Part shown: piece after piece, positions 7,170 to 42,711 of the stretch
Position numbering within the stretch: the stretch's first letter is position 1
How the letters are laid out: each line of letters starts with the position of its first letter
Source of the DNA: Chrysemys picta bellii
Taxonomy: Eukaryota
Reading direction: 5' to 3'
Assembly (NCBI RefSeq): GCF_011386835.1
Contig: NC_088802.1
Span: forward strand, 38,688,001 to 38,752,000
DNA: 64,000 bases
The notes under the pieces: model-generated
Database searches by the model: none
Told to the model about the DNA's origin: nothing
What the model saw: the letters and a program-made list of their open reading frames with translations, nothing else
Program-made: the position numbers and the translations under genes

Positions 7170-9878
7170 TTAGCTTCTTCAGACTCTATAATGGACCGGT
7201 TTTACAAAAAATAATTATCACACCACACGTTAGAGAATTTGCTTACATTGTAATGCGCAACAAATACCGCAGAGGAAAAGCTTTTAGGAAGATCAGTGGG
7301 CTGGATGCAGGGCCTGCAATCAGCATGATTAATGGCTTTAGTATTGTACAGAAACATTCCCTTCCCCCACCTCCTTGACATGCTTAGAATACAAATCTGT
7401 AACCCATGATTCTGATTCATGTTCATGCTGTAGATTCTGGCAGCGAATACATGTTGCTCTGGGGGTCGGGGACTTTGGTCATCCCTGTATTTTGCACAGT
7501 GGTAGCAAGCTTTGACACTACATGCAATTGATGCGAAATGAACATGCAAAACAAGGGTGGTAAAAGGGGTCACCCCTGCACAAGCAGAAGAGACTGTATC
7601 TTGCTCTAAGAGGAGACTTGGGACACTGCTTCTCGAGGGAAAACGCAGCTCTCTTCTTAATAATGGTGGGAGTGCTCCATAGACAGTGCCGGTGTAGACT
7701 CTGTCTTGCAGGAACATCAAAATGGGGGGGAACAACAGGTTCACACCGCCGCAATGGAGGAGGAAAAACTGCTTTTGATTTGAGTCTCGTGAATGTGGTG
7801 GCGCCTCATTCTCTGCTTAAGTGTTTAATAGCCCCCCTTTTAATCACACACACAAACCTCTCTTCTCTTATCCCAGTGATTACACAAATCGCTCCCTGTG
7901 GGGCACCTTAAGCCTTGAATTCTGATCATTTGCAATGAAACGATTCATGATTCTCACTACCATCATCGATTTTTTTTTTCGCAAAGTCAGCACAAGGCTA
8001 ACAATTTCCCACTGTCACAACCGCAGTACATTGCTTGGCACCCAGATGCAGAACAAAGGGGGGAAATCTAACATTTTTTATGTCTATACAAACACACAGA
8101 CGTGCTATCACAAGCTGTAACAAAATAACCACCATGCAGCTAAAGGAATGAAAGAGAAGAAAGGGGAATGAAAGAGAAAGGAAGGGAAAAGAATGAGATA
8201 CTGTACCTTGCTGCTTGCTTCATTTAACCTATAGTAAATTATGTCCTGGCTGGTAGAAATTAAACAGCATGAGGTAAAGTCTGGAGCATGTTGCGGCTAT
8301 TAAAGAGATCCATGTATATATTAGGGGAAAAAACTAGGCGACAAGGGTAGGGAGTCAAGCACAGGCTCCAGAAAAAGAAGCGAAGTGCTCTTCTTTTTCA
8401 CCTATTATTTAATGTAAATTCTTTCTGTCCTGCTTGTGCCCTGAGCGGCTCCCCCGGCAGCCTCTACTCCCTCCCTCCCACTCAGTTAGAAGTGTTCATT
8501 GTAGACCTGAGCGCTGTCACGTAGTCCCAGGCACTTATCTGGAACTGCAAGGGACAGCGCCTCTCTGCTGCAGAGGAGGTAAAGGTAACGCCTCATTCTC
8601 ACAGCTCGGCTAGGACAGAGTGGGGGCAACAACAGCAAAGAAGCTTCAAGACTGACATTCACACGTTGCTAAAGGGCACTGCTTTGTTTGTACACACTTC
8701 ACCACTCCATACAGGATATGCTTTTCTAGCGCCTCAAAAGCAGAAACTAACGTGAAGTTCCACAGATCTCCTTGAGTTTTTTTGTGTTAAGACATTGAGC
8801 TTTTTGTGTTGCTTTTTTTCACCATGACTATTAAAAAGAAACAAGAGAGCTTATCTCAAACTATAGTACCTACATTGTAGACTGACTTGCCCCGAGCCTG
8901 AAGGCTGTGCCTACTGTGCATATATTGATTTCAATAAACAATAAATGAACACAACTGCACTATTTGTTTGTGTCTTCCTTGAGAGACAAATAGAAATTGC
9001 TTCTATATTTTGTTCACTTGCAATAACAAAAATTGCAGAAAAGCGGCTTTGCCCACACCCTGCAGTGAGAAGGGAAGCTGTTTGTAGACTGTATTTGGCC
9101 CTTTTGGTGTCCCAAGCATAATTTAAAGTGCTGTTATAAATCAGAAAATAGCAAACAGTGGAAACATGTAAACTGTAATTATGCACAGTAGTATGGAGCC
9201 TCATATATCCTCTGCATGACAACTGTACTCACATTCCCTTTAAGGAGACAGTTAACATTAATGGCAAGTCATTGACATACAGAGAGATTTGAATAGCTTT
9301 TCCTGCTGTTCTTGAGTTTGTTTGTATGTAATATTCAACAATTACACATGGGCAAAACTGCATTCTTCTTTCCTTTTATTTTTTTCCCCTCTGAGTTTCT
9401 CTCTAAGACAGCTCCTTCTGGATTTAGGAAGGTTATGGAAAAATCATATTACTACAGCTAAATACAATGCAAATGATAATTTCCTGTTTCTATAACTCTG
9501 GTTTTCATGATTTAGTAAGCACAGTACATGTGATTTTACATGTTTCACTTCTCTTTTGTGACCTTTTACATTTTAAAGGCTAAAAAGTGACAATGACCTT
9601 GAATCTGTTTTTATTCAGATCCCAACTGGAAGCCTCAGCTATAATGGTATTATTTACCACAAAAGTTTTCCTTCCCAAAACAGCAGATATACCCAACTCC
9701 ATGAAAAAGACTTCTACAATTTAAACTGCAGATCCTTATGCACCTGGATCACAGGTTCAGTATTTTCAGACATTAATACAAAGGTCAAATTCAATATTGG
9801 GATCTCTTTTCCATTTTATCCTTTAAAACAAACAAACAAACAAACAAAAAAAACATGCAGCTATGCACATCTGTGCAG

Positions 9879-36095: not shown

Positions 36096-36585
36096 TACAT
36101 CAATTCATCTAGATATTTGCCTAATTTAACAACAGGCTACATAAAAAGCACTAGCAAAGTCAGTACAAACTAAAGTTTCATACAGGCAAATCACTTGTTT
36201 ATTCTGCTCTGTATACTATACACTGATAAGTACAATATTTATATTCTAATTGATTTATTTTATAATTAGATAGTAAAAAGGAGAAAGAAAGCAATTTTTC
36301 AGTAATAGTGGGCTGGGACACTTTTGTATTTTTATGTTTGAGTTTGTAAGCAAGTTGTTTAAGGGTATGTCTACACTACGAAATTAGTTCGAATTTATAG
36401 AAGCCGGTTTTATTGAAATCGGTTGTATACAGCCGATTGTGTGTGTCCACACATAAAATGCTCTAGGTGCTCTAGTCGGCGGACCGCATCCACAGTACGA
36501 GGCTAGCGTCGACTTCCGGAGCATTGCACTATGGGTAGCTATCCCACGGCTATCCCACAGTTCCCGCAGTCTCCGCCGCCCCTTG

Positions 36586-38278
36586 GAATTCTGGGTTGAG
36601 ATCCCAATGCCCGGATGATGCAAAACAGTGTCGCGGGCGGTTCTGGGTACATGTCGTCAGGCCCCTCCCCCCCCGTCACAGCAACGGCAGACAATAGATT
36701 TGCGCCTTTTTACCTGGGTTACCTGTGCAGACAACATGGAGCCCGCTCAGCTCAGCTGAGCTCACCGTCACCATATGTCCTCTGGGTGCCGGCAGACGTG
36801 GGACTGCATTGCTACACAGCAGCAGCTGCTAACTGCCTTTTGGCGGTAGACGGTGCAGTAGACTGGTAGCCTTCATCGGCGATCTGGGTGCTGGCAGCCG
36901 TGGGGCTTGCCTTTTGGCAGTGGATGGTGTATTACGACTGTTAGCCATCCTATTACAAGTCGGGTCATCGCACGTTAGCAGAGTCTTCCCCGAGCAGCCG
37001 ATCGTGCAATAGGCCTGAAGACCATCGTCATACACTAACTGCCAAGCGCCCCGTATTTGCTGCCAAGCACCCAGAAAGATGCCGAGGGCTATCAGTCACG
37101 CTGCACCGTCATCTTAAGATGTAAAAAATAGATTTGCTCTGTATTCATTTGCTTCCCCCTCCCTCCGTCAAATCAACGGCCTGCTAAACCCAGGGTTTTC
37201 AGTTTAATCTTTGGGGGGACCATTCTGTGTGACAGTTGTTTGTGTTTCTCCCTGATGCACAGCCACTGTTCTTCATTTTAATTCCCTGTACCTGTACGCC
37301 ATGTCGTCACTTGGCCCGCCCTCCCTCCTTCCCCTAGTCCGTCAGATACTACTTTCGCGCCTTTTCTTTGAATTCTGGGTTGAGATCCCAATGCCCGGAT
37401 GATGCAAAACAGTGTCGCGGGTGGTTCTGGGTACATGTCGTCAGGCCCCTCCCCCCCCGTCACAGCAACGGCAGACAATAGATTTGCGCCTTTTTACCTG
37501 GGTTACCTGTGCAGACAACATACCACGGCAAGCATGGAGCCCGCTCAGCTCAGCTGAGCTCACCGTCACCATATGTCCTCTGGGTGCCGGCAGACGTGGG
37601 ACTGCATTGCTATACAGCAGCAGCTGCTAACTGCCTTTTGGCGGTAGACGGTGTAGCATGACTGATAGCCGTGGGGCTGGCAGCTGTAGGGCTGCATTGC
37701 ACCAGCCCCTTGCCCTTTGATAGGCGATGGTATATTATGACTGGTACCCATCGTCGTCATACTGGAGTGGCTGTCAATCATGGCCACCTGGGCAGACATG
37801 TTTCGATGATGATGGCTACCAGTCGTAGTATACTATTTTCTGCCAATTGCCCAGTATTGTCTGCTAAGCACCCAGAAGAGGCCGAGGGCGATGCTGGGTG
37901 CTGGCGGACGTGGGGCTGGCAGACGTGGGGCTGCATTGCTACACAGCAGCAGCCCCTTGCAGACGATGGTATATTATGATTGGTATCCATCATCATCATA
38001 CTGGAGAGGCTATCACTCATGCTGCACCGTCGGCTGCCAGCTTAAGATGTAAAAAATAGATTTGTTCTGTATTCATTTGCTTTCCCTTCCTCCGTGAAAT
38101 CAACGGCCTGCTAAGCCCAGGGTTTTCAGTTTAATCTTTGGGGGGACCATTCTGTGTGACAGTTGTTTGTGTTTCTCCCTGTTCCTGTACCTGTACGCCA
38201 TGTCGTCACTCGGCCCTCCCTCCCTCCCGCCCTCCCTCCTTCTCCTGGTCCATCAGATACTACTTTCGCGCCTTTTTT
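36586..38278 (+). repeat. Tandem duplication of the Harbinger 5' leader (unit 1 36586-37369, unit 2 37370-38278)
   Basis: Both units begin GAATTCTGGGTTGAGATCCCAATGCCCGGATG and share near-identical first ~270 bp and last ~230 bp. Confidence 0.85.
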
Positions 38279-38309
38279 CTGACCAGGCGCCATAGCTAGC
38301 ACTGGGATC

Positions 38310-39611
38310 ATGGAGCCCGCTCAGATCACCGCGGCAATTATGAGCACTATGAACACCACGCGCATTGTCCTGGAGTATATGCAGAGCCAGGACATGCCAA
38401 GGCGAAACCCGGACCAGCCGAGGAGGCGATTGCAGCGCGGCGACGAGAGTGATGAGGAAATTGACATGGACATAGACCTCTCACAAGGCACAGGCCCCAG
38501 CAATGTGGAAATCATGGTGTCACTGGGGCAGGTTCATGCCATGGAACGCCGATTCTGGGCCCGGGAAACAAGCACAGACTGGTGGGATCGCATCGTGCTG
38601 CAGGTATGGGACAATTCCCAGTGGCTGCGAAACTTTCGCATGCGTAAGGGCACTTTCATGGAACTTTGTGACTTGCTTTCCCCTGCCCTGAAACGCCAGG
38701 ATACCAAGATGAGAGCAGCCCTCACAGTTGAGAAGCGAGTGGCGATAGCCCTGTGGAAGCTTGCAACGCCAGACAGCTACCGGTCAGTCGGGAATCAATT
38801 TGGAGTGGGCAAATCTACGGTGGGGGCTGCTGTGATCCAATTTGCCAGGGCAATGAAAGACCTGGTGATAGCAAGGGTAGTGACTCTGGGCAACGTGCAG
38901 TCAATAGTGGATGGTTTTGCTGAAATGGGATTCCCAAACTGTGGCGGGGCCATAGACGGAACCCATATCCCTATCTTGTCACCGGAGCACCAAGCCACCG
39001 ACTACGTAAACCGCAAGGGGTACTTTTCAATGCTGCTGCAAGCCCTGGTGGATCACAAGGGACGTTTCACCAACATCAACGTGGGATGGCCGGGAAAGGT
39101 ACATGATGCTCGCGTCTTCAGGAACTCTGCTCTGTTTCGAAAGCTGGAGGAAGGGACTTTCTTCCCGGACCAGAAAGTGACCGTTGGGGATGTTGAAATG
39201 CCTATCGTGATCCTTGGGGACCCAGCCTACCCCTTAATGCCATGGCTCATGAAGCCGTACACAGGCAGCCTGGACAGGAGTCAGGACCTGTTCAACTACA
39301 GGCTGAGCAAGTGCCGAATGGTGGTGGAATGTGCATTTGGACGTTTAAAAGCGCGCTGGCGCAGCTTACTGACTCGCTCAGACCTCAGCGAAAAGAATAT
39401 CCCCATTGTTATTGCTGCTTGCTGTGCGCTCCACAATATCTGTGAGAGTAAGGGGGAGACCTTTATGGCGGGGTGGGAGGTTGAGGCAACTCGCCTGGCC
39501 GCTGATTACGCGCAGCCAGACACGAGGGCGATTAGAGGAGCACAGCAGGGCGCGGTGCGCATCAGAGAAGCTTTGAAAACGAGTTTTGTGACTGGCCAGG
39601 CTACTGTGTGA
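38310..39611 (+). CDS. Harbinger DDE transposase (DDE_Tnp_4/HARBI1-like family), 433 aa, intact ORF
   Basis: Motifs NFRM..F..L, HTH-like YRSVGNQFGVGKSTV, AIDGTHIP, NRKGYFS, GWPGKVHDARVF, LGDPAYPL, RMVVECAFGRLKARWR, CCALHNIC. Confidence 0.96.
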   Translation: MEPAQITAAIMSTMNTTRIVLEYMQSQDMPRRNPDQPRRRLQRGDESDEEIDMDIDLSQGTGPSNVEIMVSLGQVHAMERRFWARETSTDWWDRIVLQVWDNSQWLRNFRMRKGTFMELCDLLSPALKRQDTKMRAALTVEKRVAIALWKLATPDSYRSVGNQFGVGKSTVGAAVIQFARAMKDLVIARVVTLGNVQSIVDGFAEMGFPNCGGAIDGTHIPILSPEHQATDYVNRKGYFSMLLQALVDHKGRFTNINVGWPGKVHDARVFRNSALFRKLEEGTFFPDQKVTVGDVEMPIVILGDPAYPLMPWLMKPYTGSLDRSQDLFNYRLSKCRMVVECAFGRLKARWRSLLTRSDLSEKNIPIVIAACCALHNICESKGETFMAGWEVEATRLAADYAQPDTRAIRGAQQGAVRIREALKTSFVTGQATV

Positions 39612-39745
39612 AACTTCTGTTTGTTTCTCCTTGATGAACCCTCCAACCCCCCCCCCCCCCCCCGACCCGGTTCACTCTACTTCCCTGTAAACCAACCACC
39701 CCACCCCACCCTCCCCTCCCCAATTCGAGCACCGCTTGCAGAGGC

Positions 39746-39785
39746 AATAAAGTCATTGTTTTTTCACATTCATGCATTCTTTATT
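39746..39785. terminator. Back-to-back polyA signals of the convergent transposase (+, 39746-39751) and Myb (-, 39780-39785) genes
   Basis: AATAAA on each strand, 28 bp apart, downstream of both stop codons. Confidence 0.65.
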
Positions 39786-39877
39786 AGTTCCTCACAGAAG
39801 TAGGGGGATAATTGCCAAGGTAGCCTGGGATGGGTGGGGGAGGAGGGATGGAAAAGGACACACTGCATTTTAAAACT

Positions 39878-40380
39878 TTAACTCTTATTGAAGGCCAGCC
39901 TTCTGATGCTTGGGCGATCATCTGGGGTGGAGTGACTGGGTGGATGGAGGCCCCCCCACCGTGTTCTTGGGCGCCTTGGTGAGGAGGCTATGGAACTTGG
40001 GGAGGAGGGTTGTTGGTTACACAGGGGCTGTAGCGGCGGTCTCTGCTCCTGCTGCCTTTCCTGCAGCTCAACCATACGCTCGAGCATATCAGTTTGATGC
40101 TCCAGCAGACGGAGCATTGACTCTTGCCGTCTGTCTGCAAGCTGACGCCACCTATCGTCTTCAGCCCGCCACTTGCTCTTTTCATCCCGCCATTCAGCCC
40201 GCCACCTCTCCTCTCGTTCATATTGGGCTTTTCTCATCTCCGACATTGACTGCCTCCACGCATTCTGCTGTGCTCTATCAGCGTGGGAGGACATCTGCAG
40301 CTCCGTGAACATATTGTCCCTCGTCCTACGTTTTCTCTTTCTAATGTTCACGAGCCTCTGCGAAGGAGAAACATTTGCAG
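39878..40380 (-). pseudogene. Harbinger Myb/SANT-like protein, exon 2 (NLS-like RKRKRR, coiled coil, Pro-rich tail)
   Basis: Acceptor ccaccag|CTGCAAAT in phase 1 with exon 1; spliced frame 346 codons plus stop. Confidence 0.88.
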
Positions 40381-40807
40381 CTGGTGGAGGAGAAGGGAGA
40401 GGTGGTTAAAAAAAGACACATTTTAGAGAACAATGGGTACACTCTTTCATTACAAGGTCGCATATTTCGGCTTGCAGACAGCCATGGTAGGCCACAGTGT
40501 TTTGGCTTTTTTAACCTTCTTAACATGCGGGAAAGGTTGCAAACAGCAGCGCATTTCCCATATCAAGGATGAATTGGGTTGTCCATTTAAAATGGGTTTT
40601 CAATGTAAAAGGAGGGGCTGCGGTTTCCCGGTTAACATGCGGCACAAACACAAGTAAACCACCCCCCCCCCATACACGATTCTCTGGGATGATCACTTCA
40701 CCCCTCCCCTCCACCGCGTGGTTAACAGCGGGGAACATTTCTGTTCAGAAGAGCAGGAACGGGCGCCTCTGAATGTCCCCTTAATAAAATCACCCCATTT
40801 CAACCAG

Positions 40808-41104
40808 GTGACCGTGAATGATATCACTCTCCTGAGGATAACAAAGAGAGATAAGGAATGGATGTTGTCTGTATGCCAGCAAACACCGGGACCATACGCT
40901 GCCATGCTTTGTTATGCAATGATTCCAGACTACGTGCTACTGGCCTGGCGTGGTAAAGTGTCCTACCATGGCGGACGGGATAAGGCAGCCCTCCCCAGAA
41001 ACCTTTTGCAAACGCTTTGGGAGTACATAAAGGAGAGCTTTCTGGAGATGTCCCTGGAGGATTTCCGCTCCATCCCCATACATGTTAACAGACTTTTCCA
41101 GTAG
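40808..41104 (+). CDS. Putative BEN-domain terminal exon (98 aa) nested antisense in the Harbinger Myb intron
   Basis: Phase-0 acceptor ccccatttcaaccag|GTG, stop TAG 41102-41104, ATTAAA 41139-41144 plus U/GU tract; peptide follows a BEND3-type hydrophobic pattern (recalled, not searched). Confidence 0.62.
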   Translation: MTVNDITLLRITKRDKEWMLSVCQQTPGPYAAMLCYAMIPDYVLLAWRGKVSYHGGRDKAALPRNLLQTLWEYIKESFLEMSLEDFRSIPIHVNRLFQ

Positions 41105-41198
41105 ATGTACTGGCTGCGATTGCCAGGGCAAATTAATCATTAAACACGCTTGCTTTTTTGTGTGTAATGTTTACAAATATTTACAAAGTTACACTCAC

Positions 41199-41736
41199 CA
41201 GAGGTCTCCTGTGTGCCCTGAGGGTCTTGGGTGAGTTCGGGGGTTACTGGTTCCAGGTCCAGGGTCACAAACATATCCTGGCTGTTGGGGAAACCGGTTT
41301 CTCCGCTTCCTTGCTGCTGTGAGCTACCTACAGTACCTCCATCCTCATCTTCCTCGTTCCCCGAACCGTCTTCCCTGTGTGTTTCTCCAGTGAGAGAGTC
41401 ATAGCACACGGTTGGGGTAGTGGTGGCTGCACCCCCTAGGATCGCATGCAGCTCCGCGTAGTAGCGGCAAGTTTGCGGCTCTGCCCCAGACCTTCCGTTT
41501 GCTTCTCTGGCTTTGTGGTAAGCTTGCCGTAGCTCCTTAATTTTCACGCGGCACTGCTGTGTGTCCCTGTTATGGCCTCGGTCCTTCATGGCCTTGGAGA
41601 TCTTTTCTAATACTTTTCCATTTCTTTTACTGCTACGGAGTTAAGCTATCACTGCTTCATCTCCCCATATGGCGAGCAGATCTCGTACCTCCCGTTCGGT
41701 CCATGCTGGAGCTCTTTTGCGATCCTGGGACTCCAT
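41199..41736 (-). pseudogene. Harbinger Myb/SANT-like (trihelix) DNA-binding protein, exon 1, with premature TAA at codon 32 (41641-41643)
   Basis: MESQDRKRAPAWTEREVRDLLAIWGDEAVIA*LRSSKRNGKVLEKISKAMKDRGHNRDTQQCRVKIKELRQAY...CRYYAELHAILG; donor TCTG|gtgagt. Confidence 0.9.
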
Positions 41737-42711
41737 CACGGTTACCTGTGCTGATGAGCTCTGCGTGGTCACCTGTGCTCTCCACGCTGAGCAAACAGGA
41801 AATGAAATTCAAACATTCGCGGGTCTTTTCCTGTCTACCTGGTCAGTGCATCTGAGTTGAGAGTGCTGTCCAGACCGGTCACAATGAAGCACTGTGGGAT
41901 AGCTCCCGGAGGCCAATAACGTCGAATTCCGTCCACACTACCCCAATTCCGACCCGCAAAGGCCGGTTTTATCGCTAATCCCCTCGTCGGAGGTGGTGTA
42001 AAGAAACCGGTTTAAAGGACCCTTTAAGTCGAAAGAAAGGGCTTCGTTGTGTGGACGTGTCCAGGCTTAATTCGGTTTAACGCTGCTAAAGTCGACCTAA
42101 ACCCGTAGTGTAGACCAGGCCTAAGAGAGGTGAAACTTGGCAGTAGGCAGGACAAATCAGACTCCTGAAAGGAGTACATTAGTCTGGAAATGTTGAGAGC
42201 CACTGAATTAAACCAAAATGGCATATGCACATGCTGCTGGTCAGATACCAGAAAGTGGAGCAGCTGTCTGCAGAACAGAAAGAAGAGACCTACTCTTATT
42301 GGTAAACAGGAAGGGACTGTGTGGCTACAAGTTTTGAGAATTAAAGCAGGCCTCTGCCAGTCTAGGTGCTAGTGACTCTCCTTCAGCCAGTAAGGTGACT
42401 CCTAGTCCAGGGGTGCTGGAACAATTTTTATAATGGGGGTGCTAATGGTGGAAACCACATATTTGGTGTTTGTTCAAGCCAGGGGGTGTGGCAGCATTGT
42501 CCCAGACAGCTGGGGTTGGGAAGCTGCATGGACCAATGAAGAGAAATGAATTTGAAGTGTGTTAAAGTCTCATTTGGACTTCATTTCTAAGGCACATCTG
42601 TAAAGGTATGGGGGAACTAGCATTCTATAGTGGGATGGTAACATTTTAAACACTCATGCCTTTATTTAAATCCCTTCCATTTCCCACCATGAATAACATT
42701 GCTTCTGACTA

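What the first reader, a model, noticed from the sequence alone, without database searches (positions are those of the whole stretch)
38310..41104. In-frame alternative splicing could fuse the transposase N-terminus to the BEN exon
Seen: the BEN-like exon has no start codon ahead of its predicted first helix, so it needs an upstream exon. The transposase ORF has a good donor CAG|GTATGG at 38603/38604, exactly 98 codons from the ATG (phase 0). Splicing it to 40808 gives a 196-aa transposase-N/BEN protein with no catalytic core. Other phase-0 donors exist at 38531/38532 (weak) and 39098/39099 (AAG|GTACAT). Established: in zebrafish Harbinger3_DR the Myb-like protein binds the transposase N-terminal region. 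Inference: one promoter may yield both the transposase and a catalytically dead DNA-binding isoform that competes for the Myb partner, analogous to the P-element repressor isoform.
Basis: inference. Interest (0 to 1): 0.75.

Follow-up and report, generated by a model that had tools for sequence, protein, structure and literature searches.

The report
Transposase-start/BEN splice in turtle Harbinger
A turtle Harbinger transposon carries a real BEN-fold coding exon with a strong splice acceptor; RNA contigs join it to its own tiny start-codon exon, while the proposed splice from the transposase start is seen only in database gene models, so a regulatory fusion protein is possible but unproven.

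Summary
The sequence facts are correct. CAG|GTATGG lies at 38603/38604, 98 codons from the ATG and in phase 0. The acceptor lies at 40807/40808. The joined frame would give 196 aa without the DDE core.

The exon at 40808-41104 is real coding sequence (dN/dS 0.27-0.44) with a BEN fold (pLDDT 95.7; Z 12.0 to BEND3 BEN4).

The exon's usual upstream partner looks different from the one proposed. RNA-type contigs of two runs join 40486 to 40808 (GT..AG). That mini-exon ends in a Kozak-context ATG, and the motif ATG|GTARGCCA is kept in four diverged copies. This gives a 99-aa two-exon third gene inside the Myb intron.

No transposase-to-BEN joint was among the 15 joints listed; 21 more were not shown.

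Five other gene models also leave the transposase at that donor. Both splice sites therefore look usable.

A good phase-0 donor is not beyond chance: 27-47% of codon-shuffled ORFs have one.

Verdict: partly supported. The fusion is plausible as a minor isoform, and a repressor role is untested. This scan had already noted the BEN exon on other DNA of this genome (s1-314110, s1-323757).

The parts
36363..42121 (+). Whole Harbinger copy, flanked by the 3-bp target duplication TAA (36360-36362 and 42122-42124). Terminal inverted repeats GGGTATGTCTACACTACG... / ...CGTAGTGTAGACCAGGCC.
38310..39611 (+). Intact transposase ORF, 433 aa. DDE_Tnp_4 covers residues 215-376.
   Evidence: E 1.5e-36
38310..38603 (+). 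Transposase N-terminal 98 codons, the proposed 5' exon of the fusion. Ends ...WWDRIVLQ at the donor CAG|GTATGG (38603/38604).
   Evidence: The donor is kept in 4 of 5 copies. It is used as a donor in models P0008/P0014, P0077, P0078, P0082, P0083 and P0086. L007 42474/42475 reads CAG|GTATGG.
38529..38537 (+). Weak phase-0 donor CAG|GTTCAT (38531/38532). Not conserved among copies.
   Evidence: 1.8 bits; CAT|GTTGAT and CAG|GCTCAT in other copies. Used only in the Chelonia model P0007, which spans two copies.
39096..39104 (+). Phase-0 donor AAG|GTACAT (39098/39099). No model or joint uses it.
   Evidence: 5.8 bits
40465..40486 (+). 3' end of the BEN gene's own first exon (its start is unknown). 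Ends in the start codon ATG 40484-40486 in the context GCCATGG. Donor ATG|GTAGGC at 40486/40487.
   Evidence: Joint 40485->40807 (cut +1), GT..AG, in runs X1 and X6. The motif ATG|GTARGCCA is conserved in L002, L003 and L004.
40487..40807 (+). Intron of the BEN gene, 321 nt, GT..AG. Its length varies between copies (about 245-445 nt) and it is poorly conserved.
40808..41104 (+). BEN-fold coding exon (98 codons plus stop). Acceptor ttcaaccag|GT.
   Evidence: dN/dS 0.27-0.44. AF2 pLDDT 95.7. Z 12.0 to BEND3 BEN4. The acceptor is conserved in 5 copies.
41139..41144 (+). ATTAAA, the likely polyadenylation signal of the BEN mRNA. Matching signals follow the stop in L003, L004 and L002.
   Evidence: read in the sequence; inference
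41199..41733 (-). Myb/SANT-like gene, exon 1, with one premature stop at 41641-41643. Donor CTG|GTGAGT.
40381..41198 (-). Intron of the Myb-like gene (818 nt). It holds the BEN exon, the BEN intron and the end of the BEN first exon on the other strand.
   Evidence: Joint 40380->41199, CT..AC on the + strand, in all four runs.
39878..40380 (-). Myb-like gene, exon 2 (coiled-coil tail).

Best explanation
The exon at 40808-41104 is the coding exon of a third gene of this turtle Harbinger family. Its normal mRNA starts in a short exon inside or just beside the Myb intron. That exon contributes the start codon (ATG 40484-40486, context GCCATGG). It is spliced over a 321-nt intron to 40808, giving a 99-residue BEN-fold protein that probably binds DNA.

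The acceptor is strong and takes many partners: it also ends annotated isoforms of several host genes. The transposase ORF in turn holds a usable 5' splice site after codon 98. Read-through transcripts from the transposase promoter can therefore occasionally join 38603 to 40808 and give the 196-aa protein. This is most likely on internally deleted copies, where the intron is short. On present evidence that fusion is a minor by-product and not the exon's regular upstream partner.

Shown here: both splice sites, the fold, purifying selection, the 40486-40808 joint, and the annotated fusion in a relative. Inferred: how abundant each isoform is, and any function.
For: RNA-type contigs:
- Joint 40486|40808 with GT..AG in two runs, from two organisms and two studies. 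The Myb intron is removed in all four runs, which serves as an internal control.

Conservation:
- ATG|GTARGCCA with a Kozak context is kept in four copies that are only 71-80% identical in DNA.
- The exon has dN/dS 0.27-0.44 and no stop or indel across three copies.

Fold:
- pLDDT 95.7.
- Z 12.0, rmsd 2.2 over 87 residues to BEND3 BEN4. All 13 entries with Z>=5 are BEN domains.

Many partners for the acceptor:
- Rab-3C X3, CDK6 X2, TEDC1 X5, PFKFB4 X4/X3, a GlyT1-like model, and LOC128826488 X2, whose first exon lies outside the element.

Fusion is possible:
- Malaclemys P0008/P0014 read ...WWDRIVLQ|VSTNDITLL. In L004 the donor CAG|GTATGG is at 8367/8368 and the acceptor at 9521/9522, and the intron is present in the DNA.
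- The same donor is used in five further models.
Against: - The 40486-40808 joint rests on single contigs with only 22 letters on the shorter side. It was seen in two runs whose RNA status is a guess, and not in the one run on record as RNA (X13).
- Contigs cannot give abundance or transcript starts, so 'main' versus 'minor' is inferred.
- No promoter or start site for the mini-exon was found.
- 21 joints were not shown, so a 38603-40808 joint in these runs is not excluded.
- An earlier follow-up in this scan (s1-314110) favoured the fusion.
Confidence: 0.55

Rival explanations
1. The BEN exon is a regular alternative 3' exon of the transposase gene. One promoter yields both the full transposase and a 196-aa protein made of the transposase N-terminus plus BEN. 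This protein lacks the catalytic core, binds the Myb-like partner and DNA, and tunes or represses transposition, as the P-element repressor isoform does.
For: - The exact junction is annotated in two RefSeq isoforms of Malaclemys LOC128825970.
- The donor is the best in the ORF, is kept in 4 of 5 copies, and is used in six models.
- Phases match.
- Transposase-N/BEN models recur in Chelonia and alligator.
- The Myb-like protein is said to bind the N-terminal end of the transposase (PMC9392472).
Against: - RNA-type contigs give a different upstream exon with its own conserved start codon.
- The junction positions of the fusion models differ: after about codon 30, 71, 74, 98 and 196.
- The Chelonia models checked are artefact-prone. 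P0007 spans two copies and continues into the antisense of the Myb exon. P0005 runs across assembly gaps.
- The donor letters are almost fully fixed by the conserved residues Q-V-W, so their conservation says nothing about splicing.
- A phase-0 donor this good arises in 27-47% of shuffled ORFs.
- The fusion would need read-through of the AATAAA at 39747.
- No function was tested.
Confidence: 0.17
2. The fusion never forms from full-length elements in living cells. The database fusions are products of gene-prediction pipelines that chain the transposase start exon to the next strong acceptor, mostly on deleted or rearranged copies. Only the two-exon 99-aa gene and the host-gene exonisations are real.
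For: - No transposase-to-BEN joint among the listed joints of four runs.
- No protein with the junction from assembled sequencing runs in three word searches.
- The one well-formed fusion model sits on a copy that lacks the transposase core, equivalent to window 38722-39833.
- Of the Chelonia fusion models, the two whose loci were checked are poor: P0007 spans two copies and P0005 runs across gaps.
Against: - NCBI's pipeline normally needs transcript support to name alternative isoforms (general knowledge, not checked here), and two isoforms share the junction.
- The same donor is used in independent RefSeq models joined to host exons (P0078, P0083). The splicing machinery therefore probably recognises it.
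- 21 joints were not shown.
Confidence: 0.25

Closest known systems
Drosophila P-element 66-kDa repressor isoform (retention of the third intron)
   Same: One transposon gene could give both an active transposase and a shorter protein without the catalytic part that keeps an interaction or DNA-binding module. (My own knowledge of the P-element literature, not checked here.)
   Different: The P-element repressor arises by intron retention and keeps the transposase's own THAP DNA-binding domain. Here the core would be swapped for a separate BEN-fold exon 2.2 kb downstream, which also has a start-codon exon of its own. Neither tissue regulation nor repression has been shown here.
Canonical PIF/Harbinger elements (e.g. 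zebrafish Harbinger3_DR): two genes, a DDE transposase and a Myb/SANT-like protein
   Same: DDE_Tnp_4 transposase, Myb_DNA-bind_4 partner gene, TIRs and TAA target duplication. The two-gene layout and the Myb-transposase interaction are described in PMC9710019 and PMC9392472.
   Different: A third conserved coding exon with a BEN fold lies antisense within the Myb intron. No paper in the searchable library links BEN and Harbinger in this way.
BEN-domain DNA-binding proteins (BEND3, BANP, BEND6, NACC1; the small 'BEN-solo' repressors of Drosophila)
   Same: Predicted five-helix fold with a short hairpin. Z 12.0 to BEND3 BEN4, 8.9 to BANP, 7.5 to BEND6. About 100 residues, like BEN-solo proteins.
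   Different: No Pfam BEN hit for this exon. 13-16% identity to solved BEN domains. Encoded by a transposon. DNA binding not tested.
Host-transposase fusion genes formed by alternative splicing onto transposon exons (Cosby et al. 2021, listed as reference 22 of PMC9710019; paper not held, my own knowledge)
   Same: Splice sites carried by a DNA transposon capture neighbouring exons. Here the BEN exon ends annotated isoforms of Rab-3C, CDK6, TEDC1 and PFKFB4, and the transposase N-terminal cassette is spliced into CCDC90B and a HEAT_Maestro-domain gene.
   Different: In the published cases the captured part is the transposase DNA-binding domain. Here it is a non-transposase BEN exon, or the N-terminal transposase segment ahead of its HTH.

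Membership tests
PIF/Harbinger DNA transposon | DDE transposase of the DDE_Tnp_4 / Plant_tran type | tested here: met
   PF13359 E 1.5e-36, residues 215-376
PIF/Harbinger DNA transposon | Second gene for a Myb/SANT-like DNA-binding protein | tested here: met
   PF13837 E 1.9e-8 on the minus strand. The gene is spliced (joint in 4 runs) but carries one stop in this copy.
PIF/Harbinger DNA transposon | Terminal inverted repeats and a 3-bp TAA/TWA target duplication | tested here: met
   TIRs at 36363 and 42121, TAA on both sides
BEN domain (Pfam PF10523) | Sequence match to the family profile above its curated cut-off | tested here: not met
   No BEN hit at E<=10 for the exon or its 7 close relatives. 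Distant members of the same family are below the cut-off (P0041 20.8 bits, P0070 18.4 bits, against 23.2). No PDB sequence or profile hit.
BEN domain (Pfam PF10523) | BEN fold (helical domain with a short hairpin, as in BEND3, BANP, BEND6) | tested here: met
   AF2 pLDDT 95.7. Foldseek top hits are BEN domains, TM 0.70. VIA Z 12.0, rmsd 2.2 over 87 of 98 residues. All 13 entries with Z>=5 are BEN domains.
BEN domain (Pfam PF10523) | Sequence-specific DNA binding | not testable with these tools
   needs EMSA, SELEX or ChIP
Transposon-encoded regulatory isoform made by alternative splicing (P-element type) | The alternative mRNA is observed | tested here: inconclusive
   Not among the 15 joints listed for 4 runs; 21 not shown. 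The junction is annotated in RefSeq models of another turtle on a deleted copy.
Transposon-encoded regulatory isoform made by alternative splicing (P-element type) | The isoform lacks the catalytic domain but keeps an interaction or DNA-binding module | tested here: met
   By sequence only. Residues 1-98 stop before HTH_Tnp_4 (138-174) and DDE_Tnp_4 (215-376). The BEN fold is added.
Transposon-encoded regulatory isoform made by alternative splicing (P-element type) | The isoform lowers or tunes transposition | not testable with these tools
   needs excision and integration assays

The most novel reading that the evidence does not exclude
Turtle Harbinger elements run a built-in splice switch. 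The N-terminal module of the transposase, thought to be the part the Myb-like partner binds, is alternatively spliced to a BEN DNA-binding exon. The resulting protein has no catalytic core and competes with or guides the transposase at the element's ends. That would be self-regulation of a kind not described for PIF/Harbinger. The same two splice sites would also explain why these elements so readily graft BEN or transposase-N exons onto host genes.
Probability: 0.12. Interest if true: 0.8.

Novelty: new variant of a known kind. Interest (0 to 1): 0.45.

Why it matters
PIF/Harbinger elements are described as two-gene transposons. A conserved third coding exon with a BEN fold, plus working splice sites that can link it to the transposase start or to host genes, would add a possible self-regulatory layer. 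It would also add a ready source of new host protein isoforms, since several turtle genes already carry annotated BEN-ended isoforms.

For this particular finding the value is narrower. It turns a guess into two concrete, countable junctions, 38603^40808 and 40486^40808. Long-read cDNA can decide between them.

Tried and rejected
- Pfam scans of the exon and its close relatives found no BEN hit, and only noise at E>0.01 (DUF416, MAAL_N).
- PDB sequence and profile searches found nothing meaningful.
- The first AF2 model, from an 8-sequence alignment, was poor (pLDDT 61.5) and was not used.
- L001, a contig assembled from a public sequencing run, was checked as a possible spliced transcript. 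It is collinear genomic-type DNA with deletions.
- The Chelonia fusion models P0007 and P0005 were checked as support for the donor at 38531. P0007 spans two element copies 7 kb apart and runs into the antisense of the Myb exon. P0005 crosses assembly gaps. The 38531 donor is not conserved, so it is rejected as a real donor.
- Conservation of the donor letters at 38603 was considered as evidence for splicing. It is rejected as uninformative, because the conserved residues Q-V-W fix nearly all of them.
- The alligator locus L008 is too diverged to confirm the mini-exon. It has only a possible ATGCAG|GTACTG about 280 nt upstream of a strong acceptor.
- No other copy of the element lies in the window.
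- The Sinzelle 2008 and Cosby 2021 papers are not held.
- P0008 and P0078 are not on record for a locus look-up.
Full report
**What is there.** Window 36363-42121 is one copy of a PIF/Harbinger DNA transposon in a turtle genome. It has terminal inverted repeats and a TAA target duplication on both sides.

On the + strand lies an intact 433-aa transposase ORF (38310-39611; DDE_Tnp_4 E 1.5e-36 at residues 215-376). On the - strand lies the Myb/SANT-like partner gene (PF13837). That gene has one premature stop and one intron, 40381-41198.

**The observation.** All stated coordinates hold:
- CAG|GTATGG at 38603/38604, 98 codons from the ATG, phase 0.
- CAG|GTTCAT at 38531/38532, phase 0.
- AAG|GTACAT at 39098/39099, phase 0.
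- Acceptor ttcaaccag|GTGACC at 40807/40808, in frame with 98 codons and a stop.

On an approximate donor matrix, written from general knowledge and not a calibrated tool, 38603 is the best of 61 GT sites in the ORF (8.4 bits). It ranks second of 343 on the + strand of the element.

This is not beyond chance. 47% of codon-shuffled versions of the ORF have a phase-0 donor of at least 8 bits, and 27% have one within the first 214 codons. In-frame Val codons supply the GT.

**Is the exon real, and is it BEN?** Pfam gives no BEN hit for it or for its seven close relatives, even at E 10. PDB sequence and profile searches are blank.

The exon is nevertheless under purifying selection. Against two diverged copies it has no stop or indel. 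dN/dS is 0.44 against L003, 0.27 against L002, and 0.30 between those two.

A profile search of 1.84 billion representatives found 63 proteins with the domain, nearly always at the C-terminus. They come from turtles, alligator and geckos.

With a 36-sequence alignment, AlphaFold gives pLDDT 95.7. Foldseek's best matches are BEN domains (BEND3 BEN4, TM 0.70). VIA-align gives Z 12.0, rmsd 2.2 over 87 of 98 residues, and all 13 entries with Z>=5 are BEN domains. Two distant family members have BEN as their top Pfam hit, below the cut-off (20.8 and 18.4 bits against 23.2).

So the fold is BEN. Sequence membership in Pfam BEN is not met.

**Which upstream exon?** I laid the contigs of four RNA-type runs on 36300-42150. 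One run is on record as RNA-Seq. The other three are guessed to be RNA.
- All four remove the Myb intron exactly (40380->41199, CT..AC on the + strand). The runs therefore hold spliced RNA of this family.
- Two runs, from two organisms and two studies, join 40486 to 40808 with GT..AG.
- The exon ending at 40486 ends in ATG (40484-40486), in the context GCCATGG, followed by GTAGGC.
- The same ATG|GTARGCCA is present upstream of the BEN exon in three other copies that are only 71-80% identical in DNA: L003, L004 and L002. The intron between is poorly conserved and varies in length.

The spliced frame reads M + 98 residues, giving 99 aa.

No joint from 38531, 38603 or 39098 to 40808 was among the 15 listed.

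'No start codon' is private to this copy. Close relatives read VTMND where this copy reads VTVND.

A search with a Chelonia model found Malaclemys LOC128825970 isoforms X2 and X1 (XP_053864861.1 and XP_053864860.1). Both read ...RFWARETSTDWWDRIVLQ|VSTNDITLL..., which is exactly the predicted junction.

In the locus (L004):
- The donor is CAG|GTATGG (8367/8368) and the acceptor is aaccag|GTGAGC (9521/9522).
- The 1154-nt intron is present in the DNA, so this is a modelled splice and not a deletion.
- The copy lacks the transposase core, equivalent to window 38722-39833.

A further search showed five other models that leave the transposase exactly after ...WWDRIVLQ:
- RB1 and UY3_17233 in Chelonia.
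- CCDC90B X2 in Natator.
- LOC125633506 X1 in Caretta.
- An Eretmochelys product that skips from residue 98 to 139.

In the Caretta locus, the transposase codons from about 22 to 98 form a cassette exon (L007 42283-42474, donor CAG|GTATGG) inside a gene with a HEAT_Maestro domain.

The donor is therefore usable. I could not check the RNA support behind these models.

**The acceptor takes many partners.** The BEN exon ends annotated isoforms of Rab-3C and TEDC1 (Chrysemys), CDK6 (Malaclemys), PFKFB4 (Trachemys and Chrysemys) and a GlyT1-like model (Mauremys). It also ends LOC128826488 X2, whose first exon lies outside the element.

Other models that fuse transposase to BEN join at various places, after about codon 30, 71, 74 or 196. 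Some of those from Chelonia are plainly artefacts. The 38531 donor is not conserved.

**Reading.** The most likely account has three parts:
- The exon belongs to a small two-exon third gene with its own start codon.
- The element also carries a real donor after codon 98 of the transposase.

That this isoform is regular and regulatory remains possible but untested. It would need read-through of the AATAAA at 39747. The claim that the Myb-like protein binds the N-terminal end of the transposase is repeated in PMC9392472. The original paper is not held.

**Earlier notes of this scan.** Two follow-ups on other copies in this genome reached opposite readings: fusion favoured (s1-314110) and a two-exon 99-aa gene (s1-323757). 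My RNA joints and the conserved ATG donor agree with the second. The RefSeq model agrees with the first. I did not test the Xpat resemblance named in the second note.

**Left out.** The natural database proteins P0008 and P0014 stood in for it in searches. I did not fill or look up any N stretch in the fetched loci.

Noticed in passing
window 36582-38300: This copy has about 1.55 kb of extra, tandemly repeated sequence (units of about 800-930 nt) between its left end and the transposase ATG. The first bases of the ORF (ATGGAGCCCGCTCAG) occur three times, at 36737, 37535 and 38310. Other copies (L003, L004) go straight from the equivalent of 36754 to that of 38297. The transposase promoter may therefore be displaced here.
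   Followed up: partly
window 41641-41643 (- strand): The single premature stop of the Myb-like gene is private to this copy. The contigs of all four runs read another letter at 41643 (table 3), so the expressed copies carry a sense codon there.
   Followed up: partly
window 40808-41032: A second + strand joint, 40807->41033 (GT..AG, skips 225 nt, a multiple of three), appears in runs X13 and X1. It uses CAG|GTGACC as a donor, the same CAG|GT that serves as the acceptor. It would remove most of the BEN frame. It could be an alternative splice on intron-retaining RNA or a deleted DNA variant; this is not resolved.
   Followed up: no
window 40427-40486: In this copy the mini-exon frame is open from a possible acceptor, cacattttag|AGAACA (40426/40427), to the donor at 40486: 60 nt, phase 0 to phase 0, with another in-frame ATG at 40433. 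A three-exon product (transposase-N + 20 aa + BEN) is arithmetically possible here. Other copies have about 37 extra nt at 40444-40449 (table 5c; L001, L003), which would change this frame.
   Followed up: no
L007 42283-42474; L004 8173; proteins P0077, P0078, P0082, P0083: The N-terminal coding part of the transposase also has an internal acceptor (atcctgcag|TATG, near codon 22). In gene models it is exonised as a cassette or first exon into host genes: a HEAT_Maestro-domain gene in Caretta, CCDC90B in Natator, RB1 in Chelonia.
   Followed up: partly
proteins P0039 and P0075 (PFKFB4 isoforms): A PFKFB4 isoform of 462 aa ending in a BEN exon of a more distant subfamily is annotated in both Trachemys scripta and Chrysemys picta. 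This suggests a shared old insertion that is still modelled as an alternative last exon.
   Followed up: no
protein P0064 (1818 aa, ZMYM-type), residues 1392-1469: A weak profile hit (E 2.7e-4) of the BEN-like family lies between the MYM zinc fingers and the QRICH1/DUF3504 part of a ZMYM-like protein. It may be chance or a distant relative.
   Followed up: no
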